NCBI GenBank assembly: GCA_977030845.1 | Contig: OZ365118.1 | Coordinates: forward strand, 18,414,001 to 18,478,000 | Length of the DNA stretch: 64,000 nucleotides | Direction of reading: 5' to 3' | Source of the DNA: Fimbriosthenelais zetlandica | Taxonomy: Eukaryota | In this document: positions 29,434 through 64,000 of the stretch, piece by piece | How positions within the stretch are numbered: the stretch's first letter is position 1 | Layout of the letters: the number at the start of each line of letters is the position of its first letter | Position numbers and translations under genes: made by a program | Notes under the pieces: generated by a model | Database searches by the model: none | What the model saw: the letters and a program-made list of their open reading frames with translations, nothing else | Told to the model about the DNA's origin: nothing

Positions 29434-32400
29434 CTAGGCAGAGTGGGTGTTCTGATTCTCCTGCTCCCTCAGGGCGTTGTATTTTTCAATTTCCTCCTTT
29501 CTCACCTTTAGTGGCCAGTCTTCTACCTCTTTCAATGTTTTTGGTAGAGCTCGTCTGAAGGTTTCTGGTACAAAGACAACTAGTACAGCCACAATCATTG
29601 ACAGGCTGCCGCAGATCCCACGTACGATCCCAGGCACCGCCCGCTCCTAAAACAAACAGATGTGATTCATTTCAATTTTGAATTTTGCAAGACTTGTTGT
29701 TATGCCTTCAAAATTCTTGTAATGCTGCATCAATACTTACAATAGGCCTGCAGTATGGGGCTATGAGATTAGCAGACAGAGCCCAGAAGAAACACATTCC
29801 AAAATAGACACTCCTGATACTTGTAGGGTAGAGTTCAGGCGAGTATACAATAATAGCACAGTAGCTGGCAGTGATACCAAACTTCCCAACAAAGTTGAGA
29901 ATAATGGAGAAAACCCTGGATTTTATAGCTGAAAGAAGCAGAAATTTGAGCACAGTTTCCTGACAAAGACCAGTGGAATTATCTGGTCTTTTCAAGTTTA
30001 ACTATATCAACATTATAAAGCTTCATTTTTTAACTGTATGTACGTACCAAATTCCTCCACAAGGGTGAGCAGCAGGGCTAATCCAGCAATAACGTGGAAC
30101 ACGCATATTGGCCAGCGACGACCATATCTAGAGGTTGAATTAAATGCTCAATAATAACTGGTTTACAGTTGGAGGCAATGCTCAGTGTTTAGTTAATCTG
30201 AAGTCATGATTGAACACCCAGTTTATCTATGGAAGGTTTTATAACCCCATTCAGAATAAGCATTGTCAATGAGTACATTCTGGACCTACCTGTTGAGCGA
30301 CCAGTGGAAGCCTACTATGGCGGGGAGTTCAGCCAAAGCCAGGAGGAAGAAGTTCAGATAGCGATCACCAGCAAGATAGGTGACTGTGAGACTGAGTGAC
30401 GAGTACACGATGCTGTTTGTAAACCTAGAAATATAACATATTCAGGCTAATCATAAACTCCCTTAGATTGTCTATACTATTACTATTAGCCTTGTGGTGG
30501 TTTGTGGCGAACTTATATTGAGCCTGCTCCACAATTCAGCATATCTTTATGTTCTTATCAGTGTACTTACCATAATAAGAACAGTACTAGAGTGATGTAT
30601 CTGTATCTGCTGGACTTCCACACATCTGTCCAGTGTATCTCTTCATCAACTGGTGCGACCTTGTCCTGTAGAGGTTCCACTAGTTCCTTACTGTCCTCCC
30701 TCTTCACCCACACTGGACCACTCCCATACAGACTCCGGCGCTTGGTCACCCCGGCGATGCTCGCAGCTATACTGTTAGTGCTACCAAACATGGGAATATC
30801 AGCTAACTCAGCTTCCTTGGGTGGTTCTTTGTCCTCTTTCTTGCCATCAAAGAAGCCTGGTGGTATGGGCTTTTTGTTGATGCGACTACCAAGCTCCAGG
30901 TACTGCCTGGCCCTGTCATACTGCTTAGTTACCATTAACCAGGGCAATGACTCGGGAATCAACCTGAAACATACATTAAAAAGTCTTAACTATTCAAGCC
31001 AAAGGTTTACATATTTATGCAACTAAAACTCAGGACTGAGGTACTATACCCATGGGGAAATAACCCTGTCTCTCTTTATGAATATTCAGTCAGTTAGTGA
31101 TTTGAAGCTTGAAGTTAAAAATCTTGTTAAAAATTCAGTCAAATGATATCTTACCAGTAATAGGCAACACCTAAGACTAAAGGAAGATTCATCACGAGTT
31201 GCATGACCCTCCAATCACGTAAAAGGTAGACCAATAATGAACATAACATCATGGAAGTAAACCAGGCGAACTCTACGGTGGTGGACGCAAAACTCCGAAA
31301 CTCAGGAGGAAAAAGCTCCACTACTAATAGCAAGAGCATGGATGCAAAGCACTGTAAGAAAATACATTGATTTCTTCAGCATGGAAATTGTCTAAGCAAT
31401 AGATAGATTGAATGTTGGATGATAGTTTGGATGAGCATAGACGGGCACAGATACTGTCAGTAGTTAAAACTGTGCATAAATATCATTGAAATAAAGCTCC
31501 AATTGTGCATTTAGCGAAAATGCAAATTAGATGTGAGGATATATTTGATGATAATTGAAGGCGACCATTGTTAAATGCATGAGATAAACAGCCCACCGTC
31601 ATAGAGATCCAGCCTAGGGCATCCAGTATAATATACGTTATCATATTGGGAGAGAAAGCCTTGGCAATGTTACAGACGGCTCGGGCAGCACAACCACAGA
31701 GAAATATTTTCTTCCTGCCAAATGTATCAGCAAGCTTATTAGCAAAGACCTGTCCAAGGGCCATAGCTGCGCTGGATATCATCATAGAGTTCTCCACCAG
31801 TATGTTACCACCACACACTAGCTCATACTGAAATGTAAAACAGATTTAAACAAATTATTATTTCACTGACAGTTATTTCCGATCGTCTGCAGGATTTTAG
31901 GTTCTTGCAGTATGCTGTTTGTATTTCCACTTTGATAACTTTGGAAGCTACAATCACTCTAGTACTATTTCATCTATGTATGGAATTCTATTTAGAAGAT
32001 GATTTAATCATTATAATTTGACTCACGTCAGTTACAATGGTCCTTATGTAGCCTGAGTTGGGATCAAACTGCCAGCCGTCAGTACATGGTATTGTTTTAT
32101 TACTGACTGTGATATCCTCGTACATGTGACAGCTATCATCCATCCACTTACCGTCCTTCAGTACCTGGGGTATCGTCTCGTTCTTAGTGGCATTCACAGG
32201 TATCTTACAGTGATGCTTCGGTGTGTCAACTGAAACGATGACAATAGATTCAAATATTTTTGAGAAATCTTTTAGAAAATATTTATTCTCGATTACACTG
32301 GAGGTGCATGAGTTAAAGATACCAAGTGGTCTCGGTTTCTATAAAGGAAGATGTTTGGCAAGGCTCTGATTGTTCCAGATGGACTGATATACCTTGATCT

Positions 32401-34316
32401 GAAATGTGTGATGTTTTCCCTGTCTTTGGTGTCATCTAAAGCTGCCTATCATAGTATTTAGATTATCAATGAATTAACATCTCACAGAGTGACCTCATTG
32501 AGTATAATCCATGATAATAGGCAGATTACCGTCCTTTATCTCCTGATAATCCAGCTCTGTCAGCACTCTCACTGAACCAGTGACAGTTATCACTGTCAAG
32601 TGGCATAATCTGTCACTCAAACTCTAGGAAAGTTCCATGGGTTAAGGAGGCGGGAAGAGATCAAAATCTTCCATGCACTTTGTTTTGAATGGAATGCTTC
32701 TAACGAAGTCAACAAGGAATGAGGTCAACTGCATCGAGCAATGGTGACAGTGACAGTGACAGTTGACAGTTGACAGTTATAGTCTGTCAACCAGTAAACC
32801 TCAGAAAAATTTCCGTCAGTAAACAATGAGAAGAGGCTAGCTACCCATCCAAATATGGAAATCTGAAGTTAAAGGTGTTATTTAAAGATTCTTGGAATCA
32901 ACATAAACAAGGTCATAGTTGATTCTATCACAAGGTCATGCTATATCTGCTCTATATGTTTATTAACTCATTCACTCATCAGTTAACACCTGATAATGCT
33001 CTTTTCCCTTATCAAGATATGAGATATGGCATATTTATCCGAACGGGATAGCCAGAGACCTTATATGACCTTATAAGGTCTCTGGGATAGCTCAGTATTG
33101 GGTACGGAATCTGGGATTCTTGTTCTGGTCATTCCTGTCCCCAACCCCCCTCATTTGTGACAATTAAATTCTCACTTTGTTTAGAAATTTTGATTTTGCG
33201 ATGGAGCAAAATATAACCTCTGTTATTTTCAAAATAACTTGATAGTTATTGCAAGGTTGAAAATGGTCTATTAAATGGCCAGTTCTGTTTATCATTTACA
33301 AGGTTTGAGAGGGTTTTGATATTATATTTATAAAGGCAAGTGAAGAATCTCTAACTTGTTCTGCTTTGGGTCATGTACTCAATAGTTTCTGGAAAATTTC
33401 CAAAAGGTTTCTTCACTGAGCTGAAAAAACAACAACGGCTGGGGGTAGAAATAGGGAACATATGTAAATCATTCTATAGAGAATATAATTATAAATGACC
33501 CTTTAAGAATGACCCGTAACCTCTTACCCGAGATATCAGCGAACAATTTAACCGAACAGTTTTATATTATGTGACCAACTACTCACTGAGTCATGAGACT
33601 AGATAAGATTCAATTTAAGACAATAGTATCATTATATCTGCTATCTCCTTACTGTGCTTCTTATGTGAAATACTAGTATATCAAGGATTTAGCTTCTGTT
33701 TGCAATATTTTCTTTTTAATGGAATTGAGCATCGGTATGAATAACTCACGCTAAGTCTTTAAGTATCCCACATAGATAACTATTGTTAATCAGTTGTGTG
33801 TTTTGGGCAGGGAAATCTTGTTGTCTAATTGATTTTCTGCCAATCATAATATCTGCTCTGCTATAGACAGATAACCTTGGCATACTTTATGTAATGTTAT
33901 TTCAACAGACCTTCCTTCTCATCCTTTGTGGCTATGCTACATTACTAAACGCGAAATTCTAATTAATTTCCCTTTCAGTGGACTGAAATGAAGTTATCTT
34001 TATTTTATGTTCTCTAATTGTCAATCTTAAATTTGTATTTTAACATTTAGGCAAATATTCCATGGTATATATATATTAGATATATTGACATCACAAGTAT
34101 TAGGTCCAGTTTGTTATTTCTAATATAAAGTGTTTGATTTGACATACCTTGAAAGACAAAAGACATGAAATGGAAGGACAGGGTAGTGTACATGAGGCTG
34201 ATGAGGACATAAATGCCCATCTGCCATCGTCCCCGTGGTCCAATGATCCGTAAAGCCTCATCTAGATCCCAGGGTGGAGGTGCACCCTTCATACCATCCT
34301 CACCCTCACCCGCCAT
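29434..34316 (-). CDS. SLC22-family (MFS) organic cation/anion transporter, 602 aa, 9 exons
   Basis: complement(join(34148-34316, 32027-32229, 31597-31827, 31155-31351, 30571-30963, 30290-30424, 30048-30127, 29741-29928, 29434-29646)); 1809 nt in frame. Cys/N-glycan-rich first loop (HHC..C..CTDGW..TIVTDYELVC), motif A LADTFGRKK, ELFPPEFRS, IPES, YGRR, ELYPTSIRS, VPET..RALP. Confidence 0.93.
33052..33085. repeat. 14-bp perfect hairpin in SLC22 intron 1 (probably a MITE/HINE terminus)
   Basis: CCAGAGACCTTATA-TGACCT-TATAAGGTCTCTGG, flanked on both sides by GGGATAGC. Confidence 0.7.
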
Positions 34317-34849
34317 CCTGATCTCAGACTAGGGTGATCTCAGGCCTGTAATGGAGTGGGAGTATAGGGGTATGGAGATGGTCCTGGTCCTTGGTAGACT
34401 ACAGTGGTGGCCAGAGAACAGCTGATCTACATGGGTTCACTCCCCTTATCAACGAGAGTAAAATTAAATTATTTTACTCTCGTTGCTCTTATCTAGGTAC
34501 TCCCTCCCCCTGTCACCAAGCACAGAGGTGTCGCTGTGTCCTCAGATATCTCTATAATCCAGTATCCATTATTTATTCTATATATGGCATATTCTGTTAT
34601 CTTAATATATGGCCCGCAATCCCACTCCAAACTATCCATAAGAATAAACTGAATCTGTATTTCTCTAAATTCTCTCATTTGACCTTCATTGGTTCAATTA
34701 TAGATTATCGTGATCCAGTCACGTTCCAAAAGTAGACATAAATGTCTGGAAATGTTTCCTTAAGAACTTTTTGTCTTCATTTTAATGGAAACCAGATGGC
34801 GACACCAAGCTGTGCCTTAGCCCGAGTGTCAAACTTAAGCACTATGGGG

Positions 34850-42097: not shown

Positions 42098-45062
42098 TTA
42101 CTGTCGTCGTGTTAGTTTAACCTTGATTCCGTCCTGAGGTCGCAGGATGACTGCTAACATTGGTTTGAGATCAGCTCGTTTCTGTGTTGATTCAATGTTG
42201 AATTTCCTCAGGATGGAAGAGAGTATCACTTTCTCTTCATTCATAGCAAATTTCTGACCTGTGAATTTAAAAATATATACCTTATGAAATTGTGAAAGAT
42301 TCCAGTCACTTGGATGTGTACTTTACTTCTAATTTTAATGGGAATCTTAGAATGAATACTTTCAATAGTCTATAGTATTGGCAATCAGTAGACCTTTTAG
42401 TCACTCACCAATGCAGTTCCTGGGTCCTGCAGAAAAAGGAATGAAAGCAAACGCATGTCGCTTGGAAGATTCATCCTTGGTGAAGCGATCAGGGTTGAAC
42501 TTGTCAGGTTCGGGGTAGATGTCTGGGTTCCTGTGCAGGGCTGCTACTAACGTACTCACTGTGGTTCCCTTGGGGATCATGTATCCCTCTATAGAACATA
42601 GTAAAGTTATAAATACTTTATTGTAACCACACCTTGAGAATGAAATCATTGGAAAAATAATTCTGCAATTATTGATGCATTAATTGTTTGAACCAGATGG
42701 TCACCCATACTATTGCACCCATACTGCACATACCTATCTCCGTGTCCATCTCAAGCTCTCTCCCAAAGAAAGGCACTGATGGGTACAGTCTCAGAGTCTC
42801 CTTAATGACACATTCAAGATACTTTAACTCTCTGATATCAGCCATGGTGGCCGCCCGATCAGAGTCTCCAAACACTCTGTCCACTTCCTCATGAAGTTTC
42901 TTCTGAACTTCAGGCTCACTGCCAATCAGGTGGACTGCCCAGTTCATGGCTGCAGCTGTTGTATCATGCCCCTGTTAAAGAGAACACTTTAAATTGATCT
43001 GTGGAGATGTATTGTATACTCATTGTGGATATTGAGTAGCATCTTTACCTCAAACATGAATGTGTCCACTTCTTCCTGAATGTCACTATGTGTGAGCCCC
43101 TGATCCTTGGCCATAGACAGCAGCAGATCAAGGAAGGCAAGTCGACGGCCTTTGGTTTGTTTCTCAAAAGTCTCATCATCAGAATCAAAGTTAATCTCAA
43201 GCCCTCCAGAGGCTTTAAGTTCATTTTCACGTTCTTCAATTACCTGAAGTAGAAATATGAGGAAGGTTAGTGAGAGGAAAGTCATCTGGAATGAGTGTGT
43301 TTATAATATGGTGCCATTATGTCAGTTGGCCATTGAAATTTCCACCAACTTTTCTTGTGAAGCCATGTAGAATCTCCAGGCAGTGATCGTGCTCCTTGCC
43401 ATCTGGGAATAACTTGAACAGAATGTCAGGCTGAAGCCATGGTGTGCGCAGTCGCTTCATGATGATGTCACTAATCCTAAAGGAGAGTGAAAAGACTTCC
43501 TTCACTCTAACATCATTATATTCTAGTCCTTCAATTATAACCAGGGGGGCATTTATGATAAAGGAGATGAATTACACTAATGCAGTGACAGGAATTCGTG
43601 GATGAAGATTTGAATGCACCCTCTTCATTCAATATTTCTAACGCACCAAATTTCTATTATATCACACAAATAGCATTGCAGGAAGTATGACACTCTGGCC
43701 ATTGTAAAACAACCCTTTAGTCTATGGTTATACAATGGCCTTATTGTTCTATACTGATCTGCATAGTTCATTTATTGATCTTCATAGTTCATATTATCAG
43801 ACAGGGCATGACTTACTTGTAGACAGTTTGAATATACTCAGACTCGCCGTCTGACAGCTGAGCATTGACACTCCTTCCCATGGCGGTTTCTGTAAAACAA
43901 AGTCACTATTAAGGTTCTTAACTCTGATTGTCATGAATTATCAAACACTAATATATTGAACATGTTCTGATCTGTCAGTAAAGTTGAAATTACCACAGAT
44001 GATGTCGAGGGCACAGAGAGTGATGTAAGGGAAGGTGTCAAGTTCGCCGCTGTCACAAGCTTTGTCCAGCCTTGACATCATGACAGCAGTCTGTTCATTG
44101 AATACTGTCATGAAGTCATTCAGAATCCTGAAGTGAAATGTTGGTGTCAACATCTTCCTTCTTCCCTTCCATTTCTGGTTTGTGCTGTAATAACAAAATA
44201 AGCATTGATAGAAATGTAACACAACCAAGGCATGAGACATAAGGTAGTACATGAGATGGTACATGAAATGGTACATATCTTATTGTTTTTCTTGATGATG
44301 TTTATTGGTTTAATGTGGTGAATAGACCAAATAAAGAAAATTGGAGAAAGATGGAGATGAGGTGATAGTTGATGAGGACTGGGGAATGGATATTAACAAT
44401 GTTTACCTTGTTAGTAGTCCCAGCTTGAGCCAGGGTTGAATATAACGGTACTCTTCAGCTTTAGTTAGGTTCTTCATAGAGCTGAGAATAATCTAAACAA
44501 GAAAGATCATTATCTCAAGCAAATTGTGAAACTTTTTTTTATACTTTGATATATAAATGAACTCTTTATGAACTCTAAAAGAAAGATTATGAACAATTAA
44601 GTCTCGAACCTCAGATCCTTTAGGACCGGATATGAAGACCGCTGGACGTGGTCCAAGGTTGACTCTAAAGATGGAGCCATACTGAGCCGCAAACTGCATA
44701 ACCTGCCTGTATAACACTGTAAGGATATTTAGAGGTTTTATGTACATCACTACTTGAAAGACAAACATCTACATCCTACTCATTATTCTTAATACAAATT
44801 CATATAATACATTACTACCATATATCTGAATTATATTTTTGTCCATATTGTAATAATAGTTCAGAGATATTGAAATCACAGAGGAGAGACTTGCCAACCT
44901 ACCATGTGCATCTGTGGATAACTCGAGGGCATTTCCAAGGATAGGTAGAGGTTTAGGGCCAGGTATATGAGCTAAATCCCTCCTGTCTTTGTCCAGTGAG
45001 AACAGCCAGTAGATGAGGGAAAGAACGATGGCAAGGAGGGCAATAAAGACTCCAGAAATCAT
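42098..45062 (-). CDS. Cytochrome P450, CYP4 family (CYP4V-like), 505 aa, 10 exons
   Basis: complement(join(44903-45062, 44610-44716, 44407-44492, 43994-44184, 43817-43889, 43350-43476, 43049-43243, 42734-42971, 42409-42588, 42098-42258)); 1518 nt in frame. N-terminal anchor and [18 protein letters not shown]-helix [22 protein letters not shown], heme loop [10 protein letters not shown]. Confidence 0.96.
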
Positions 45063-46064
45063 GATGATGTAGTGGTGTTATCCCGTCATGTGTAGACTGT
45101 GTTAGGCTTGGTTGTGTGGTACTAGCCGGGCTGCCCTACTCTCACTGTGTGCTACAACCCTAGATAAGCTGGCCTAGTCTCAGGACTGCGTGCCACAGCC
45201 CCAGATGTGTTAAGATTCATGGATATCAAGTCCTACAGTATGGACCAAAAATATTTGTACACTTTCAAAAAAATTCATTTTATTAAATCAGAATAAGGTA
45301 ACACCTTTTACTGACTGTTTTAACATCTTACTGGTAACTTCTCATACACAATCAGACCCATTTATAAATTAATACGACTTTATTGCGTATTATTTTAATT
45401 AAAGAAATCACTCCCCCAAAATATTATATTATCCAAGATGTTGAAATAAGTTTCAAAGATACTGTACAGAGAGAACCTTATACTGGACTATGTCATTGTG
45501 AACTTTCCGAACTTTCCACTGCTTGAATATTCGTTTAAAGATTAGAGTCTACTCGTTAAAGATTACTTTAGAGGTTTAAAGGTTAGGCCCTACCCAATGA
45601 AAAGCTCCTGCCAACTAACTGTTCCTTTCAGTAGGCAATATACAACATTAAACAAACATTGGGTAGCTTTATTACTTCAACTCAAATGTTGAAATGGTTG
45701 ATTTAAAAAAATACTCTCTAAAATTGGTAGCAAAGTAGCTTTGGCCTCCCTTTAAAAATGTTACTATGGTTTCCCTGTGAAAGGCCTCGTTTACATCAGT
45801 GTCTATGACATGTTTACATTGAGAGTCTGCTAGGTTTACGTTGTACTCCTTCCTGACAGGGCTAATGGACGTTTGTTAACACACTATGAACGGTCCTTAT
45901 CACAAGCATGTAATATATGGCCTGGGTGGGAACCGGGTACTCGCCATTCAGCGCTTAAACTGTTGGAATATTTGTGAAGAATCCTCCTTGTTATCCTCAA
46001 GGTTAATCAATGACTTATATTTGATGTTTGACATGTTAGAATGAGAATAGAGTCGGTTGAAATG

Positions 46065-53497: not shown

Positions 53498-54744
53498 ATG
53501 GTGAGTTATTACTGTTTAGTTTTCTCATACCATCTCTCTTCTCTCTATCGTATTTCGTGCTCATTTTAATCTATTATGTACTATTTTGAAGTAAATGTGA
53601 GGATCAAGTTGAGATTATGTTTTATAAATATTTGTGATGTACTTTCAGGATATAAGATTGTTTATGTTAGCGGGTGTTTTCCTGCTGGTTGGTTGTGGCT
53701 TAGTTCTCTACATCACGCCTGTCAATAGTGAGTATTGTTCCTCAAACTTACAACTCCCTTCTCCCTATATCATCTATGGCTTAACTAATGTTGTCTATTT
53801 TGTCAGATCGTCTTGCTCCACCAAGAATGATTTTAAAACAGACTGCTGTACCGGAGGACAGATCTGAGTGTGCTTCAAAACAGACTACTGGACCCAAGGA
53901 GAGATCTGACCGAAGAATAAAGAGAATCGAGCACCGGTGCCATCTTCTGAGTCAGAAGTATGGCCATATGAAGAATTCATTAGACACTCATTCCCGCCTG
54001 TCGCTCCTGGTGGATCAGAAGCACCAAGTTCTCTATTGTCCAACAGGCAAAGTGGGCAACACGGCATGGCGAGGTAAAATGATTCAAACCTCGGACGCGG
54101 GTCAAGCAAATCCCCGCCTGGCAAATATCAACTTTGGGCCAGGACTGACAACTAAGATCCTGTCAAGGTGGGTGTCCTTGTGGAGCTTTAAATGATCTTA
54201 CGAGGTTATCTGACCTTGTCAATTAGGCTGACCTTGACCTTGTCAATATTTAATTTCGAGCTTATCCATTCACAGGTACGGCATCTTTCCATTGAAGAAT
54301 TTCTCCGAGGCAGAAAGAAAAGAAATTTTTACCAAGTATAAGAAGTTTCTGTTTGTGCGGGACCCTCTCGACCGGCTGGTTTCTGGTTATCGACATTTTG
54401 GGCAAAGAACAATGAACTTCAAGGCCTTCATTTTTCGGTACACCCATAGCAATCTCAGAAGCTGTGACTTTGCTCCCGCCATTGAGTGCTGTAACCCCTG
54501 TGCCATAAAATTTGACTTCATCGGACACTTTGATAATTTCTCCGAGGATTCCTATTATGTGCTCAGGACATTCTTCAATGAGACTAAGTTAAAGTTTGGA
54601 TCTAGTCCACATGCCACCCACACTAACAAAAAAGTGACTGAAAAGTTTATCAAAACATTGACTGACGATTTGAGGCAAAAATTGTTATTAAAGCTATCAG
54701 CGGATTTGTATCTTTTCAGTTCAGAACCTGGAATCTGGGCATGA
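53498..54744 (+). CDS. Carbohydrate sulfotransferase (Sulfotransfer_2; CHST11/HNK-1ST-type), Golgi type II, 303 aa
   Basis: join(53498-53500, 53649-53727, 53807-54167, 54276-54744); 912 nt in frame; start codon ATG|gtgagt at an exon end. N-terminal TM, 5'-PSB-like YCPTGKVGNTAW, 3'-PB FLFVRDPLDRLVSGY, CNPCAIKFDFIGHF. Confidence 0.88.
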
Positions 54745-55432: not shown

Positions 55433-58400
55433 ATGGCTGGAGCAGGAGGTGATAATTCGACGGTTATCCGCCATTTTATGTGCAGTACGACGTTCCATGG
55501 TCTCCACTACGTGTCAGACGTCAAGGGTCAGCCACTGAGAAGGTCAGTCATATAATAACTATATCATCCGGGGGTCTGGTACTCAGTACCAGTAAGCTAA
55601 TTAGGGACCACCTCAACAGTTTTTTCTCTAAATTAAGTTCTTCAATTTTGAACCAGACCACCACCCCACTTCCATGCATTTTTTTCATCAATTAAAGTGA
55701 GCCTCGGTCCACCACCACATGTTTTAAAGGATTTAAATTTAGAAGAAGAAAAACTTGCGAACTTTTGAGGTGGCCTCTTATGGTTACCCAGTGAGACTGT
55801 CAGTGTTTAATGAGTGCTCTATGTTCCTCAGTGAAGGATTTGATGGTTAATATAAGCTAACATCTTCACTTCAGGTTCCTCTGGATGCTGGCAGTGTTGG
55901 CAGCCTTCACCGTCCTGGCTATCATTATCGTGGCTAACTCTCTACTGTTTTATCGCTACCCGAAAACACTGGCTGTTAACATTCAGTATGGTCAACATGT
56001 CCCCTTCCCGGCAGTTACTATCTGTAACCTTAATATGATCAGGTAAGTCATCACCTTAATATGATCAGGTAAGTCATCAGGCCTCATATCTCAGTTACTA
56101 TCTGTAGGCCTAACCTTAATATGATCAGGCAAGACAACATCTCTTACCTCACATATTTGTTCTCTGATTTTGGGGTGATAATTATTTACGGAACAAGTTG
56201 TGACAAATCTGATATATTGCTCCCTCGTTCTGGCTTTTGAGTGTACTACCACCATAGCTGTAAGAGATGTGTCTAGAGGTGTTTGGTAAGATGTTTGGTC
56301 ATACTTTCAGATCATCTGTAGCGCAGAAGCGCGATTTGTACGACAGTTTACGTCGTGATTTCCTCCGATTCCGGACCAACAGTCCCCGCAAAGATGAAGG
56401 TGAGAAATAAATCTATTACAAATTGTCTGATAATCCCTTTCACTTTATCCTTAATTGCATGGACATTAACATAGTTAACATGGTTATTTTAGAGTTACTC
56501 TGCAGCTCCTTATAGGTGAGAAATAATCGTCTAATTATCTTTCTCTTGATACGTAACTTCATGTTATTTTGAGTTATTTTGCCTGTTTTTTTTTCAGGAG
56601 AGGAGGGTACGTTTTATGGGTACATTAACGTGAGTGTCGTCGGTGAGGTGACAGCTCTCAGCCCGCCCGTGTCTGGTGTCACATTGTCTGTCTGTCAGCA
56701 GCTATGTGTGGGTCGGCAGGATGTGGCCTGTAACTCTATACTCTATGATTATAACCATGGTCAGTGTACTCTGTCACAGGCTATACTCTCCTCCTCTACT
56801 GTCACCTTTATACACCAAGATAATGTCCACTACCTGGAGTACATACGTCCTGAAAGTAAGTCATACTGTCCTTAAAGGTCCACTATCGTTATCCTCACAC
56901 GGCTCATCCACTAGGTTGCAAGAGACAAGAGATTGCTTGCGATTAGAAGCGATGGGTGTAGATGAGGTGCCAGCAATCAGATCGCTATTGTTCATTCACA
57001 TAAGCGATCTGATCGCCGGTACATCGCCCATCGCCTGTAATCGCACCAATATTCCAAATATTGAACGGTTGAATCGCCAGTGGTCGATCCCCCTTGCAAC
57101 CTAGTGGATGAGTCATATTAATTATTCATCTAAATGTATTCATATGTCCTCTACTCCTTAATCGCCACCTATATTTGTTATCCTACTAATCGTCACCTAT
57201 TGTTATTAACCTCTGACTTATTGATGACCTCGCCTACCATGTCTTCTATCTGATGTGTCCATCTCCCCTTTGACACCTGTAGTTACTGAGTGCTGTGTGA
57301 TTTTGACATCACCCTGTACACTCCTCCCATCTAGTGTTAGGTTCAGACCTTATACTGTGTATTGATGGACTCATTGTGGGGGACTCAATGTCCTCTATGT
57401 AGATCTTTCTTTACTTTATTAAATATTAACAGCATTTTAAATGTACATTGACGATCCATTACTAGCACTGTGAGTTAGCCGGGGGACAACAAGCATTTTT
57501 ATGTCCCATCAATGGATCCACTAACAGGTGGAGATTTAGCACACTAAAATTACATCACAAACATGCAAGATTAATCATCGTATGTAATTATGTCAGAAAC
57601 TAGAACGAGTGGACGTGTTGTAGCCATCAGCGGATCATGTTCTGTAGGAATATTAAAAATAACAGAAACTGTTAAATAATGTGAGAAATATCTGATCCGC
57701 CAAACGATGTTTGTCTGTTTAAGGTACGTTAGACATGCGGTGTATGTTCGAGGCTGGGTTATGTCATCTACACCACAGCGGTGATGAACACGCCGTGTGG
57801 AGGCGAACTCTGCGATCAGAGAATGGTTACTTTACAGGTCCCCGCGGTGACCACACCTCCCAACAAGGTACTCTAACTCTTTACTGATATCAAATATTAA
57901 CAGTGGATCATTATTGTATTTCAAGATATTACATTTTGATCTAAGGCATGTAAAATTAGAGTATTACTTTAATTATAGGTTACTAAATGTATTAGATTAC
58001 ACTGCTCTATCATTTACAGGCTACTATTAAAGGCCTATATCTATTACAGGGTACTATATATCTATTACAGGGTACTATATATCTATTACAGGCTACTATA
58101 TATCTATTTCAGGCTACTATATATCTATTACAGGCTACTATATATCTATTTCAGGCTACTATATATCTATTACAGGCTACTATATATCTATTTCAGGCTA
58201 CTATATATCTATTACAGGCTACTATATATCTATTTCAGGCTACTATATATCTATTACAGGCTACTATATATCTATTACAGGCTACTATATATCTATTACA
58301 GGCTACTATATATTTATTACAGGCTACTATATGTACGTGTCTATAGGTGAGGGGGAGGTAGCCGGTATCGCCTCCTCCCTCATCACAGCTCGCTCTAGTC

Positions 58401-61400
58401 AGCGATGTCTTGAGTTTTACTATCACATGTACGGCCGTAACGTGGGTGAGGTGAGACTAAACCTCCACCACGCGGACGGTGTGAAGGAGATCATCTGGCG
58501 GATTAAGGGTAATCAGGGGGCGGTGTGGTACAGAGCGTTTATACCCGTACATAGTGAGGTGTATAGGCTGGAGCTGGAGGGGACAGGTAGAGCCGGTCAC
58601 GAGGATTATATAGCCATAGATGACCTACGACTAGCTGAATGCTCCTCATTCAGTAAGTCTCATTCTTCTGCCAAGTTTCCTCTATACTTACCAACAGTTA
58701 GCTGTAAAGTAGTAAGACAGGTACAGAAATGAACATTCTCTGTTGCTAGAGTAACAATTAACTTGCCTCTCTAAGTGTCATTACGAACTTTTGGTGACTT
58801 ATGCAGTTCCTGATCTTGAATCTTCTTGGCATTGGCATTTCCTCAACTGCTCAATAATTGACTTATATTCATTGTTTTTTCAGAGACTAACTGTCAGAGA
58901 TATGCTGACGGTTCAGACTATGTGGGTAACGTATCAGTGAGTAGTACAGGTACATCGTGTGTGATGTGGTCTCAGGTCTCATCTCCCCTCAATCATCTAC
59001 ACTTCCCGTATTACTCTATAGACGAGGCAGCTAACTACTGTAGGAACCCTGATGGCTCCCACTCTCCCTGGTGCTACGTTCATCTCGCGGGAGCACGAGA
59101 GTTCTGTGACATCCCTTTCTGTGGTAAGATCAGAATTCTTCTTTATTTATGAGCCTTTAAGAAGTCATTTACCAAAGCAACAGTTTTGTTGCCATATTCG
59201 TACAATGTAACATTTTGCTCTTGTTTCTAAGTCTCTGACTATATCGTTTGTTTAAGTAACTTTCAACCAGGAAAGGAGATTTGGTGATAGCTTGATGGCG
59301 GCCATCTTGTCTCTGTCAGTGTTACCTTAGCTTGATGGCGGCAATCTTGTCAGTGTTACCTTAGCTTGATGGCGGCCATCTTGTCTCTGTCAGTGTCAGT
59401 GTTATTTTGCAGCATGTGCTGACAGTGAGTTTTTGTGTAGTAATGGTCGATGTGTGACAGCTGACAGACTGTGTGACGGCGGGAATGACTGTGGTAATAT
59501 GGAGGATGAAACTTTAAAAACCTGTGGTGAGTTTAACTTCAATAAATTACAATACTACTGGTTTACTGCCAAGCCAGCCTGACTGGGTCGCTGCTTAGGT
59601 CACATCCTCCTACCCCTAATTAGCACATTGCCCCTGGTCTTATTGATATATCTCTTATACATCTATGTTTCATTTTGAAGCTGTGAGTGTTGGTTGTGAC
59701 TTTGAGCAAGCCTTCATGTGTGGTTACACGGTTAACCAGAAGAGTCAGGTGTTTACTTGGAGACGTCAACAAGGTCAGACAAGGTCACCTGATACTGGTC
59801 CAATATTAGACTACACGGAGGACGCGGCAACAGGTGATTATTACATTAACACATCTCTAACGTCTTAATAAACGTCTAACTTACAGACAGACTTACTGAT
59901 CAATGATATATATGTGATTGTCAGGTTCCTACATGCACGTGGACGCGACGTTTGGTAGTCAGGGTGACTGGGCCACTCTGATGTCACCGTTTGTATATAA
60001 CGTGTCAGACGTCATGCCTGGATGTCTACAGTTCGCTTATCACATGTATGGCCAACATATAGGTAAAGTTATCGTGGCAAGAACACTCATTTTAATGCAT
60101 TTTTTATTTCAATTAATGAACAAGAACACATTTCCATATTTATTCTTGAAAAGAAAATGGCATTATAATAGGTTGATAATACTCTATAATGTAATAATGA
60201 TTGATGATTCTATGTTTATGTAGGGTCGCTCCATGTACTATTGCTGGGTGGAGGTGAGGTCTATAGACTATACAACCTACCTGAGATCAGTGAGGATGAG
60301 TGGGTGAGTCAGTCATTGACTCTCAACCACTCTGACCTGCTCTCTATCACCACCTCTCTACAGCTAGCCTTCATGGTGGTGAGAGGTGATGGGACATTGG
60401 GTGATATCGCTATAGACGGGGTGAGGCTAGAGACAGGTACGGTGTGTCAGGCACACCTGGCAGGTGAGTCCAGTATTATTATACCAAATATATATAGGGA
60501 TTCCCCTGTGACGTCACAGCGTCCAAGCCCGGTCAGGGGGATTCCCTTGGTGACCTATGTCCAAGGGCAAGGGATCAAGCAGATATTAGCCAGGCCCTGT
60601 AGAGATCCTATACCTGTCTTATTGTGTATAGCTGGCTTTAGTATAGGTTCTGAGTACTTGCTGATGGTCATTTTGGTCACTTTCTTCCCTACAGGATGCC
60701 CTTCTGGTCAGTACCAGTGTAGGAATGGTCGGTGTATTGGTCAGCGCGGTGTGTGTGATGGGGAGGATGACTGTATGGACCGGTCAGATGAGGCGCATGT
60801 CTGTGGTCAGTTTATACCACCTTTACCATTCATTTATACTGCAATTTGTCATTCATAGTCTTAGTGATTTACTAATATGTTTACCTGTACAGCCTCGTTG
60901 GCCTGTGACTTTGAGAGAGGATCTAAATGTGGATACACGGAGAGTGTAACTGATTACCAGCAGTTTGAGAGAAGACGGAGACCTGAGTCACAAACCCGCA
61001 TCCTAGCTCCAGATTATCAAGCAAGGCTCCTCACAGACGGTGAGAGATCTCACTACATTTATTTGACTCATTTTCTGCCTTTATCGTCTCCTTTTAGGAC
61101 TTTCTAAACCCAATTTAAGTCTTTCGGCCTAAATTTAACATCTTCAGTCTATATGGGCCTGTATCTAGCCGTGATTTAATCAGCTTTTAATCATGTTTTA
61201 TTATTGTATTATCAGAGTATTACCTCTACTGGAGCATGGATCGTTACGGTTTGTCTGGCGTCTCTCACCGCCTGACGTCACCGTGGTGGCACGTGACGTC
61301 TGACGTCATCTGTCTGACGTTTCTACGTCAGGCGTTCTCTGGGAGCGGGGGTGTGTTACAGGTTTATATAGAGGAGGTAGAGGGCGCTGAGAGACTGATG

Positions 61401-63819
61401 AAAACCTACCCACAGGACAAGACACAGACCTGGTACATGGAGGAGATCAACGTAATGTGCCCATTTAGTTACCCTTTAAACGTTCATTACTGATGCCCAC
61501 ACACTAATCCCATGCTCAAACACGTCGCCATTCGATAACCCATTCTAATGATATCTAATGAAATTGTGTCTGAGCAATAAGTCAGCTAATCTCTATATAA
61601 GGAGATCAAGATTTTGTATTCCATTTTGTTTTTTCTAGATAATTGTCAGCAGCTCCAAACTTCGTGTCATATTTGAGGCTACCAGTACGTACATCGGCAG
61701 TAATGTTGGCATAGATAATATTAACTATCTACATGAGCCATGTAACACTACAGGTGAGTCTTACTGCTGATTAATCTGATCTATAGTCTGTGTCACACAC
61801 AATGTGAGGTGGTACGCCTTATTCGGTTAAATGTCTCATTGCCCACTTGTTTTCTAGTTGCCAGTGTGAACTGCTCGTTTGATGAGACCTATATCTGCGG
61901 CTACTCTGTCAGTGTCTATTCTGATTATCACTGGACAAGACAATGTTAGTATCTCTCTAATTCTGACTCATCTTCTTATATATTTATTAAGTAAGAATAA
62001 GGAGAAAGGAGGTCTGAGATCCTGGGATAAACTGTTTAAAGTTTTAAGTGTTTGTCCCATGTCATATTTCTGTGTATTATATGAGAGTTTGTTTCCGTTT
62101 TGACAGTATCTGATGATAGGTGGTATGTGATAGGAGTTGATCATGAAGCTAAACATGGTGGAAACACGACCCACCTTACTTCCCCACTCACTCTCCTCAC
62201 TCACCCACACTGTCTCCACTTTACCTACAAGATGGATGGTCTGAAACCAGACAAGTTCTCACTACATCTTAAACAGGCTGGCTACTACAGGTAGGTCTAA
62301 TAAATACCCCAATTGCATAAACTTACCTACAACTATTACACAATCTAGTCTGTAATGCTATACCAGTAGTCAGTTTAATCTGTATTAAGTACCTCTATAT
62401 TTGTAGACAGGTGTGGTGGGTGACGGGATACCAGGGTGAGACGTGGAGGGATGTAGAGCTGGACGTGGAGGGAGGAGAGTACCAGCTGGTGTTTGAATCT
62501 ATCAGGGGGTATGAGGACACCAATAACCTACAGCTGGATGAAGTCTACCTCACCCCGGGCCCCTGTAATATCTCCACATGTAAGATATCCTTGATTTTAA
62601 TTAATTTCCTCAATTGCTGACATATTTTTCTCTGTATTAAGTTAATATAAGTTAATGCTGATATGAGCTGACATGTTATTTTGTGTTTCAGGTGACTCTA
62701 ACACCAGTTTTAGCTGTAATAATGGGTTCTGTGTCGCTCTGTCGGTGGTCTGCGACGGCTGGGACGACTGTAGAGACATGAGTGATGAACTAATCTGCAG
62801 TAAGCTTCAATCTCTTAATGCCTCAATAATTCTTAACGAGCTCTCATCAAAATATCCAACCTCTCTACTCAAGAGAATACCCAAGCTCTCTACTCACCTT
62901 GACGCCAATTTCTCTTTGTTTAATGGTTCAATAACAATATATTCTTACAAGATTATATTAAATTTAAATTGGATTATATTAATTTTTCAGGTGATAGTTG
63001 TTTGACGGGTAGAGGGGAGTTCTACAATGGGAGAGTGAACGTGACCATTGATGGTCAGACGTGTCTGTTGTGGTCAGCTTTACCCGAGTCTCTACCGTTA
63101 CGTGTGTTTCCTGATAGAGATGAGAGAGGGAGGAGGAACTACTGTAGGAACCCTGGAGGGGGATTAGATGGTCCATGGTGCTACACCAGCCTGGCCGGAG
63201 ACTGGAGCTACTGCCCCGTCACTCGCTGCCGTTAGTACTTAATATTACTCCTAATCGTTTCTGTCTGAGATATCAAAGGCCAGCCATATTTCATTAATGA
63301 GAAGGTATACAAACATATATCATTAAAAGTCTGGTGAATGATATAAATGGTGACTATTGTACATTGTTTTAACACCTCAGCTTGCCGGGAGAACCAGATT
63401 GAGTGTCGTAACGGTCGCTGTGTGCCGCGCGCCGCTCAGTGTAACGGCGTCAACGACTGCGGCGACAACTCCGACGAACGCGACAACTGTAGCAAGTATA
63501 CCATGTCCTTAATATAATTTACTTTAGTGGAGTCAGTATGCTATAATGTTGCATTGCTAATTGGTGTACGAGGGAACAACCCATAGGGCAAAGTAAATGG
63601 TGTGGTCCAAGAACAATAAGTAGTGTTCAAGGGATGGACCGTATAGATATATCACTTTATTTACATTAATTCTAGTATTAATTGTAGTATTTTTGTCTGT
63701 GTGGTCAGCTGGCTCTATCAGTTGTGATTTTGATGAGCCGTACATGTGTGGGTATCAGATTGACCAGCAGAACTACCCCTACATCTGGCACCGTGATGCC
63801 TGGAACCTGGCCACAGGGG
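55433..63819 (+). CDS. DEG/ENaC/ASIC-family N-terminus fused in frame to PAN-MAM-Kringle-LDLa-MAM-LDLa-MAM-MAM-LDLa-Kringle-LDLa-MAM...; 3'-partial, about 1,202 codons in the window
   Basis: 22 exons: 55433-55542, 55875-56042, 56311-56399, 56598-56855 (PAN), 57724-57867 + 58323-58652 (MAM1), 58884-59123 (Kringle), 59413-59526 (LDLa), 59681-59833 + 59925-60062 + 60224-60463 (MAM2), 60695-60805 (LDLa), 60893-61039 + 61216-61451 + 61639-61753 (MAM3), 61858-61944 + 62107-62290 + 62407-62579 (MAM4), 62692-62799 (LDLa), 62991-63230 (Kringle), 63381-63491 (LDLa), 63709-63819 (MAM5 start). Channel motifs: [10 protein letters not shown] (HG motif), TM1 [33 protein letters not shown]. Kringle NYCRNP..PWCY. 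LDLa C..GRC..CDG..DC...DE. MAM CDFE..CG..W..DHT / CL.F.YHMYG / GDIAID. Confidence 0.9.
56903..57112. mobile_element. MITE (210 bp) in intron 4 of the channel-like gene
   Basis: Perfect 20-bp TIRs: CTCATCCACTAGGTTGCAAG (56903-56922) and CTTGCAACCTAGTGGATGAG (57093-57112). Interior rich in GCGAT/ATCGC. TSD and superfamily not resolved. Confidence 0.8.
58030..58332 (+). repeat. 21-bp minisatellite built from a 3' splice site (CAG|GCTACTATATATCTATT(A/T))
   Basis: AG dinucleotides end at 58049, 58070, 58091 ... 58322: 14 sites spaced exactly 21 nt apart. Confidence 0.97.
59288..59400. repeat. Intronic 34-40-bp tandem repeat (about 3 copies) just upstream of the LDLa exon acceptor
   Basis: TAGCTTGATGGCGGC(C/A)ATCTTGTC(TCTGTC)AGTGTTACCT units. 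Confidence 0.9.
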
Positions 63820-64000
63820 GTGAGTCCATCCTATAATATATAATACCTCTATAATGGTGGGTGCACGAGGTCCTGGGTTCAATCCCACAACCATTCTATG
63901 ACTTCCTCATTGTCCATATCCATCCAGTGCTCCTAACTGGAATATCAAAATCCAGCCATGTCTGTGGTAAGAAGCATGTAGGTCTACCACTGTCTGTGGT

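What the first reader, a model, noticed from the sequence alone, without database searches (positions are those of the whole stretch)
55433..64000. DEG/ENaC channel subunit carrying a giant PAN/MAM/Kringle/LDLa ectodomain: a possible receptor-channel chimera
Seen in sequence: three exons that the ORF track misses encode a clear DEG/ENaC start (STTFHG, TM1, [10 protein letters not shown]). They splice in frame into at least 12 extracellular modules (PAN, 5 MAM, 2 kringle, 4 LDLa; about 1,080 aa), and the gene is still running at the window end. No separate start or signal peptide for the MAM part was found. Established knowledge: DEG/ENaC/ASIC/FaNaC subunits are trimeric, about 500-700 aa, and the segment after FPAVTICN leads into the variable finger region that handles ligand and protease gating. 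MAM/LDLa arrays occur in endocytic and adhesion receptors; PAN and kringle occur in plasminogen/HGF-type proteins. Inference: this is either an ion channel whose finger has been replaced by a multi-domain ligand-binding or tethering arm, possibly gated by a large ligand, matrix tether or protease, or a type II receptor that borrowed the ENaC N-terminus as its anchor. I know of no characterised protein of either kind, but I cannot search databases.
Basis: partly seen in the sequence, partly recalled or inferred. Interest (0 to 1): 0.93.

Follow-up and report, generated by a model that had tools for sequence, protein, structure and literature searches.

The report
Giant sodium channel with receptor arm
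An invertebrate gene joins the start of a DEG/ENaC (ASIC-type) sodium channel subunit in frame to more than 1,000 residues of adhesion and ligand-binding modules; two other animal genomes carry the same module order, and one of them shows that the modules sit inside a complete channel.

Summary
Exons 55433-55542, 55875-56042 and 56311-56399 splice into a seamless DEG/ENaC N-terminus: His-Gly motif, TM1, FPAVTICN strand, start of the finger. They continue in frame, through canonical splice sites, into PAN, MAM, kringle, LDLa, MAM, LDLa, MAM, MAM, LDLa, kringle, LDLa and a MAM start. My model has 22 exons and 1,202 aa without a stop, and it is still open at 64000.

No palm, thumb or TM2 lies in the window. 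Two other animal genomes in ENA assemblies show no nucleotide similarity to the window and 24-53% protein identity. Both carry ASC exon, PAN, MAM, kringle, LDLa, MAM in the same order and strand. In one I walked 47 kb. The ASC domain resumes after the modules (beta-ball, palm, thumb, a long probably helical insert, beta12) and ends in a TM2 with a GAS filter and a stop codon.

There is no transcript or functional evidence. I found no paper describing this architecture.

The scan's first readers noted the same family elsewhere in this genome, including the next window. Verdict: a new variant of a known kind.

The parts
55433..55542 (+). Exon 1: start codon in GCCATGG context, cytosolic N-terminus with the DEG/ENaC His-Gly motif (TTFHG); phase 2 donor AAG|GTCAGT
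55875..56042 (+). Exon 2: TM1 and beta1 ([13 protein letters not shown]); donor CAG|GTAAGT
   Evidence: Pfam ASC 7.7e-13, profile 22-79; PDB ASIC1/ASIC5 matches
56311..56399 (+). Exon 3: beta2 and alpha1 of the finger ([17 protein letters not shown]...); phase 1 donor
   Evidence: Not significant alone; extends the ASC profile alignment to position 144 when spliced; equivalent exon with the same phases in the ENA contig
56598..56855 (+). Exon 4: PAN/apple module, phase 1-1, 198 bp after exon 3
   Evidence: Pfam PAN_1 9.6e-7
57724..58652 (+). MAM 1, two exons (57724-57867 and 58323-58652); the intron holds a 21-bp x 14 repeat
   Evidence: Pfam MAM 6e-4 and 2.4e-19
58884..59123 (+). Kringle 1, one phase 1-1 exon, six Cys
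   Evidence: Pfam Kringle 4.9e-17
59413..59526 (+). LDLa 1
   Evidence: Pfam Ldl_recept_a 2.7e-10
59681..60463 (+). MAM 2, three exons (59681-59833, 59925-60062, 60224-60463)
   Evidence: Pfam MAM 2.6e-6, 5.6e-9, 0.02
60695..60805 (+). LDLa 2
   Evidence: Pfam 6.1e-10
60893..61753 (+). MAM 3, three exons (60893-61039, 61216-61451, 61639-61753)
   Evidence: Pfam MAM 0.015, 2.9e-7, 0.023
61858..62579 (+). MAM 4, three exons (61858-61944, 62107-62290, 62407-62579); short N-terminal part
   Evidence: Pfam MAM 4.5e-6 and 2.3e-7
62692..62799 (+). LDLa 3
   Evidence: Pfam 1.3e-9
62991..63230 (+). Kringle 2
   Evidence: Pfam 2.5e-16; plasminogen/HGF kringles are the top PDB matches
63381..63491 (+). 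LDLa 4; its donor is GC (A|GCAAGT)
   Evidence: Pfam 1e-11
63709..63819 (+). First exon of MAM 5; phase 1 donor; the gene runs on past the window end
   Evidence: the local MAM profile matches the equivalent exons in the other genomes

Best explanation
This is one gene for a giant DEG/ENaC channel subunit.

Shown in the window: a cytosolic N-terminus with the His-Gly motif, TM1, the beta1 strand and the first finger helix. These are followed in frame by at least 1,080 aa of extracellular modules: PAN, MAM, kringle, LDLa, MAM, LDLa, MAM, MAM, LDLa, kringle, LDLa, MAM and onward.

Shown in a divergent locus of another genome, inferred for this one: after the modules the ASC domain resumes (beta-ball, palm, thumb, a second long probably helical insert, beta12) and ends in a TM2 with a GAS selectivity filter. 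The modules are therefore an insertion in the finger, not a replacement of the channel.

Inferred from established DEG/ENaC knowledge: a trimer would carry three long multi-module arms on the finger. This peripheral subdomain holds the protease-sensitive GRIP domain in ENaC and contributes to ligand and proton gating in ASIC and FaNaC. My preferred mechanism is that binding of a large ligand or matrix partner, or pulling on the arm, moves the finger and so gates or tunes a Na+-selective pore. That would be a channel with a built-in receptor or tether. Because the module exons are phase 1-1, isoforms with fewer modules would stay in frame.
For: Gene model: 22 exons, 1,202 aa, no stop. Every intron is canonical, with one GC donor, and all module boundaries are phase 1.

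Spliced exons 1-3 match an ASC profile without a break at positions 45-144. The intron between exon 3 and the PAN exon is only 198 bp and has a strong polypyrimidine acceptor.

TM1 is the only TM-like segment. The ectodomain has 58 Cys, and every LDLa and kringle has its six Cys. There is no credible separate start for the modules.

Conservation, genome 2: ENA ERZ25767047 contig ctg37294 has ASC exons, PAN, MAM, kringle, LDLa, MAM, MAM. After a retroelement come ASC profile positions 151-195, 273-321, 401-432 and 432-454, with GASVVTVCEFLD and a stop, all on one strand. Its exon 2/3 junction and exon 3 donor have the same phases as in the window, and a phase 1-1 PAN exon is available there.

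Conservation, genome 3: ENA ERZ25069853 contig ctg30065l has ASC exon, PAN, MAM, kringle, LDLa, MAM in the same order.

The three genomes share no nucleotide similarity. A conventional ASC gene fetched the same way (L004) has no modules, so the method does not create them.

Insertion site: window exon 2 aligns to chicken ASIC1 residues 44-100. The exon where ASC resumes in genome 2 aligns to residues 169-203.
Against: There is no transcript evidence for any junction. The palm, thumb and TM2 of this gene lie outside the window (one search finds none inside). For this genome they rest on unchecked first-reader notes and on analogy.

No annotated protein or mRNA-derived fragment with this architecture turned up in the protein libraries. 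The tools could not take a spliced query of suitable length, so this is weak negative evidence.

The genome 2 locus carries two retroelements and a kringle with a central deletion, so that copy may be decaying.

The gating role of the arm is pure inference. C. elegans EGAS subunits, the nearest precedent, gave no currents in oocytes (PMC10424705).
Confidence: 0.72

Rival explanations
1. Type II membrane receptor. The ENaC-type N-terminus and TM1 serve only as a signal anchor for a MAM/LDLa/kringle ectodomain, and no channel core follows.
For: Nothing beyond the start of the finger is present in the window. The window ends inside the module array.
Against: In genome 2 the same array is followed by the rest of the ASC domain and a TM2 with GAS. 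First-reader notes on the next window report thumb and beta11 about 6.4 kb past the window end. The His-Gly motif and beta1 are conserved, which a mere anchor would not need.
Confidence: 0.05
2. Two genes. A secreted or membrane MAM/LDLa/kringle gene lies inside a long intron of an ordinary DEG/ENaC gene on the same strand, and the in-frame join is coincidental.
For: Phase compatibility at a single junction has a one-in-three chance. There is no transcript data. An out-of-frame ORF with a hydrophobic start inside the PAN exon (56721-57018) has a weak phase 1 donor.
Against: The PAN exon has no start codon of its own. It sits 198 bp after exon 3, behind a strong acceptor. The same exon order recurs in three genomes with no nucleotide similarity. 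In genome 2 the exon 3 donor is also phase 1 and a phase 1-1 PAN exon is available. From general knowledge, a same-strand nested gene would need its own poly(A) site, and that would truncate the host transcript.
Confidence: 0.08
3. The cassette is mostly optional. Because the module exons are phase 1-1, the main product may skip all or most of them and be a conventional-sized channel, with the giant form a minor isoform.
For: All module boundaries are phase 1, as is the exon 3 donor. Skipping would therefore keep the frame, provided the first exon after the cassette is also entered in phase 1.
Against: Modules keep intact Cys frameworks and their order across three very divergent genomes, which implies selection on the translated cassette. 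The acceptor phase of the first post-cassette exon could not be settled in genome 2 and lies outside the window here.
Confidence: 0.12
4. Decaying or non-functional chimera. An exon-shuffling accident that is not expressed as a working protein.
For: Genome 2 carries retroelement insertions and a truncated kringle. The exon 2 donor region in the window is tandemly duplicated.
Against: The window has 1,202 aa of open frame across 22 exons with canonical splice sites. The architecture is kept at 24-53% protein identity in three genomes. The retroelement that interrupts the module array lies between exons, and its copies are 98.7-98.9% identical, so it is recent.
Confidence: 0.04

Closest known systems
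DEG/ENaC/ASIC superfamily (Pfam PF00858), ASIC-like branch
   Same: His-Gly motif, TM1, FPAVTICN beta1 and first finger helix are in the window. Beta-ball, palm, thumb, beta12 and a TM2 with GAS are in the divergent locus of genome 2. The closest full-length relatives are ASIC-like proteins of sea urchins, hemichordates, Lingula and Owenia.
   Different: Conventional subunits have about 450-700 aa. Here at least 1,080 aa of unrelated modules sit in the finger. In genome 2 a second long insert follows the thumb.
ENaC GRIP domain in the finger (from my knowledge of the human ENaC cryo-EM structures)
   Same: It is an extra regulatory element placed in the finger of a DEG/ENaC subunit. There, extracellular events (proteolysis) gate the pore.
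   Different: GRIP is a small beta-sheet element of roughly 100 aa that belongs to the ASC fold lineage. Here the insert is a string of 12 or more autonomous PAN, MAM, kringle and LDLa modules acquired by exon shuffling. Protease sensitivity is untested; the two R-x-K/R-R motifs are only a lead.
[quoted passage not shown]
   Same: DEG/ENaC subunits that carry added extracellular modules of a receptor type (PMC10424705).
   Different: They use EGF modules, not PAN, MAM, kringle or LDLa. I did not check their placement. They gave no currents in oocytes, so they offer no functional model.
MEC-4/MEC-10 touch channel with separate extracellular partners MEC-1, MEC-5 and MEC-9 (from my knowledge)
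   Same: The idea of a DEG/ENaC pore coupled to extracellular matrix-type modules.
   Different: There the modules are separate proteins. Here they are part of the channel polypeptide. A mechanosensory role here is speculation.
MAM/LDLa array receptors (MALRD1, MAMDC4) and PAN-kringle proteins (plasminogen, HGF)
   Same: Alternating MAM and LDLa modules. The kringles are closest to plasminogen and HGF kringles, and the MAM modules to MDGA1 and neuropilin.
   Different: There is no signal peptide, no C-terminal anchor and no protease domain in the window. The array is embedded in an ion channel ectodomain.

Membership tests
DEG/ENaC (PF00858 ASC) | Cytosolic N-terminus with the conserved His-Gly motif before TM1 | tested here: met
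   TTFHG in exon 1 aligns to the HG position of eight full-length relatives and of the local ASC profile.
DEG/ENaC (PF00858 ASC) | TM1 followed by the beta1 strand FPAVTxCN | tested here: met
   Pfam ASC 7.7e-13, profile 22-79; ASIC5, ASIC1 and FaNaC1 PDB matches; single TM-like segment at residues 38-60.
DEG/ENaC (PF00858 ASC) | Cys-rich ectodomain core: beta-ball, palm, thumb | tested here: inconclusive
   Absent from the window and expected beyond 64000. Present after the module array in the related ENA locus: Pfam ASC 151-195 (1e-8) and 273-321 (4e-5). Unchecked notes report it in the next window.
DEG/ENaC (PF00858 ASC) | TM2 with the G/S-x-S selectivity filter | tested here: inconclusive
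   Not in the window. The related ENA locus has ...GLLLGASVVTVCEFLD... followed by a short tail and a stop.
DEG/ENaC (PF00858 ASC) | Trimeric, amiloride-sensitive cation channel | not testable with these tools
   Needs expression and electrophysiology.
MAM/LDLa endocytic or adhesion receptors (MALRD1/MAMDC4 type) | N-terminal signal peptide and own membrane anchor or secretion | tested here: not met
   No start or signal peptide feeds the PAN exon. The only membrane segment is the ASC TM1.
Plasminogen/HGF family | PAN plus kringles followed by a serine protease (or pseudo-protease) domain | tested here: not met
   PAN and kringles are present. No trypsin-like hit appears in any exon scanned in the window.

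The most novel reading that the evidence does not exclude
A conserved invertebrate family of receptor-channel chimeras. These would be DEG/ENaC pores gated directly by a macromolecular ligand, a matrix or cell-surface tether, or force, acting through a >1,000-aa PAN/MAM/kringle/LDLa arm built into the finger. A second long insert near the knuckle might act as a stalk. In effect, a one-polypeptide version of the tethered-channel model.
Probability: 0.3. Interest if true: 0.9.

Novelty: new variant of a known kind. Interest (0 to 1): 0.78.

Why it matters
DEG/ENaC channels are gated by protons, peptides, proteases and force. How extracellular events reach the gate, and whether mechanosensitive members are pulled by tethers, is still debated.

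A subunit that carries its own adhesion and ligand-binding arm on the finger would be a natural test case. Delete or swap modules, find the partner of the arm, and ask whether binding or pulling opens the pore.

It also shows that exon shuffling of phase 1-1 modules reached into the ectodomain of an ion channel and was kept across distant species. Ion-channel surveys that filter by length or by single-domain architecture would miss such genes.

Tried and rejected
- **HMMER search with exon 2** against 1.84 billion representatives. It gave 88 hits, all ASC-only, mostly exon-sized ORF fragments at 52% identity or less. No giant protein and no self hit.
- **PAN exon in the 5.8-billion-protein index.** No candidate.
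- **Length limit.** Spliced queries long enough to reach proteins over 1,500 aa could not be given by reference. Annotated giant relatives may therefore exist unseen.
- **Exact look-up of two window ORFs**, to reach the sequence past 64000. Not on record.
- **First two fragment hits.** They sat on contigs of 435 and 1,096 bp and were useless for context.
- **ESM Atlas with exon 2.** It returned only ordinary ASC clusters.
- **Tree of the 57-residue exon 2 region.** Unresolved, so it cannot say which fragments belong to the giant family.
- **Rfam on the window.** Nothing.
- **Literature.** No paper combines ASC with MAM, kringle or LDLa.
- **Species identity.** I could not name the species of the window or of the two ENA assemblies.
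- **Considered and rejected.** A separate start in the introns before PAN. Use of the duplicated second donor after exon 2, which runs into a TAA at once.
Full report
**1. What is in the window**

The region is animal DNA with short introns and about 41% G+C. On the + strand an ATG at 55433 sits in a GCCATGG context. It lies just after an acceptor-like tract, so a 5' UTR exon probably precedes it.

Exon 1 (55433-55542) encodes a short N-terminus with TTFHG. Exon 2 (55875-56042) encodes one hydrophobic segment and [13 protein letters not shown]. Pfam ASC hits it at E=7.7e-13, profile positions 22-79. Exon 3 (56311-56399) encodes [17 protein letters not shown]... and is too short to score alone.

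Spliced as read from the sequence (phase 2, phase 2, then a phase 1 donor), the three exons align without a break to positions 45-144 of an ASC profile built from eight full-length relatives (105 bits). In PDB terms exon 2 covers chicken ASIC1 residues 44-100. Exon 3 therefore corresponds to beta2 and the first finger helix.

**2. The module array**

The PAN exon starts 198 bp after exon 3, behind a T-rich acceptor, and is entered in phase 1. From there I chained exons by open frame, splice consensus and domain continuity. The order is:

- PAN
- MAM1 (2 exons)
- kringle 1
- LDLa 1
- MAM2 (3 exons)
- LDLa 2
- MAM3 (3 exons)
- MAM4 (3 exons)
- LDLa 3
- kringle 2
- LDLa 4
- the first exon of MAM5

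Every piece has its Pfam hit. The model has 22 exons and 1,202 aa with no stop. It uses 21 GT donors and one GC donor (63492). Every module boundary is phase 1, the classic mark of exon shuffling.

TM1 is the only TM-like segment. After residue 95 there are 58 Cys and 11 N-glycosylation sequons, and each LDLa and kringle has its six Cys.

**3. What is not in the window**

A tblastn of eight full-length ASIC-like proteins against the whole window finds only exons 1 and 2. No palm, thumb or TM2 is present. The window alone cannot decide between "channel" and "anchor".

A scan for an independent start feeding the PAN or MAM exons found nothing convincing.

**4. Evidence from elsewhere**

Protein libraries gave no giant relative. 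However, some exon 2-like fragments lie on long ENA contigs, and I fetched the DNA around three of them.

*Control.* L004 is an ordinary compact ASC gene: TM1 exon, finger/beta-ball, palm, thumb and TM2 within 7.5 kb.

*Genome 2.* L003 (ERZ25767047, contig ctg37294_41x_l) has a His-Gly exon, an exon 2 homologue (49% identity) and an exon 3 homologue with the same splice phases. A PAN exon, MAM, kringle, LDLa, MAM and a weak further MAM start follow, in the same order and strand as the window.

I walked that contig for 63 kb. After a 12-kb retroelement, present in three copies that are 98.7-98.9% identical, the ASC domain resumes with these pieces:

- beta-ball CRWYGQPCSEDDF...GRCYTFN (Pfam ASC 151-195, 1e-8; ASIC1 residues 169-203)
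- palm pieces
- thumb (Pfam ASC 273-321)
- an ORF beginning with the thumb end (ECPNACHVFTYDV), followed by sequence with no Pfam hit that reads as helical; I ran no structure prediction on it
- a second retroelement on the other strand
- more such sequence
- beta12 (Pfam ASC 401-432)
- a last exon with GDLGGYLGLLLGASVVTVCEFLD, a basic tail and a stop codon (Pfam ASC 432-454)

*Genome 3.* L012 (ERZ25069853, contig ctg30065l) shows an ASC exon 2 homologue, then PAN (Pfam 5e-8), MAM (5e-19), kringle (1e-12), LDLa (7e-11) and a MAM start within the 10 kb available.

*Independence.* The window shares no nucleotide similarity with any of these loci, and the loci differ from it in G+C. Protein identity is 24-53%. 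The arrangement is therefore old and maintained.

**5. Reading**

The simplest account is one gene for a DEG/ENaC subunit with a modular cassette inserted in the finger, between the first finger helix and beta3.

The anchor-only reading conflicts with the complete channel core in genome 2. It also conflicts with first-reader notes on the next window of this genome (thumb, beta11 and a 465-aa insert about 6.4 kb past the end). I could not verify those notes.

A nested-gene reading needs a hidden start, its own terminator inside a same-strand host intron, and the same coincidence in three genomes.

Decay is unlikely for the window copy, because the frame is intact. It is possible for the genome 2 copy, which has retroelements and a kringle with a central deletion.

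**6. How it may work (inference)**

The finger is the outer, upper subdomain of each subunit. In ENaC it houses the protease-sensitive GRIP domain, and in ASIC and FaNaC it takes part in ligand and proton gating (my knowledge of those structures).

An arm of PAN, MAM, kringle and LDLa modules is built from parts that elsewhere bind proteins, carbohydrates, lysine side chains and Ca2+-dependent ligands. Attached at the finger, it could pass binding or pulling to the gate, or hold the channel at a matrix or cell contact.

Two R-x-K/R-R motifs exist (residues 725 and 1094 of the model). Both lie within modules, so proteolytic control is only a lead.

The phase 1-1 exons would allow isoforms with fewer modules.

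**7. Known or new**

The core belongs to a known family. The only precedent I found for extra modules is the C. elegans EGAS class, "EGF plus ASC", which gave no currents in oocytes (PMC10424705). Four literature searches found no ASC protein with MAM, kringle or LDLa.

I could not query architecture databases, so automatic annotations of such proteins may exist.

The scan's first readers independently noted relatives in this genome: s1-207626, s1-200419, s1-214037 and s1-223605. So this is a family here, not a single locus.

I class it as a new variant of a known kind.

Noticed in passing
window 58036-58332: A 21-bp unit repeated 14 times (96% matches) in the intron before the second MAM1 exon. 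Each unit carries a ...TTACAG acceptor in the reading frame of the exon. Using an upstream copy would add 7-aa YYISITG-type repeats without breaking the frame.
   Followed up: partly
window 56027-56130: The last 16 bases of exon 2 plus its GTAAGT donor are tandemly duplicated (26 bp x 2, 100% identical). A third degenerate copy of the exon end follows, with GC in place of GT. Using the second donor would read straight into a TAA, so only the first donor gives an open frame.
   Followed up: partly
window 63492: The one non-GT donor in the model is A|GCAAGT after LDLa 4. It is a plausible GC-AG intron.
   Followed up: no
window 53785-54744 (+), 42404-45077 (-), 29711-34328 (-): Neighbouring genes, named by eye from motifs without a Pfam scan. 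A carbohydrate sulfotransferase-like gene ends 690 bp upstream of exon 1. A CYP4-like cytochrome P450 and an SLC22-like transporter lie on the minus strand.
   Followed up: no
L006 10001-20945, with copies in L008 and L009 (ENA ERZ25767047): A Ty3/gypsy-type retroelement with gag, pol, a 906-aa third ORF without a Pfam hit, and a 62-aa ORF. At least three copies are 98.7-98.9% identical, so it was active recently. One copy sits between exons of the giant channel gene.
   Followed up: partly
L010 9698-10270 and L011 7513-8502 (ENA ERZ25767047): Long ORFs with no Pfam hit, which read as helical, lie between the thumb end and beta12 of the related giant channel. A DIRS-like element on the other strand splits them. 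This matches first-reader notes of a large insert at the knuckle position in this genome's copies.
   Followed up: partly
L003 15173-15376: The kringle of the genome 2 gene lacks about 23 central residues, including the NYCRNPD region, yet keeps its frame.
   Followed up: no
window model residues 725 and 1094 (about 60970 and 63125): Two furin-type R-x-K/R-R motifs: ERRRRP in MAM3 and ERGRRN in kringle 2. They are of interest because furin cleavage in the finger activates ENaC. Both lie inside folded modules.
   Followed up: no
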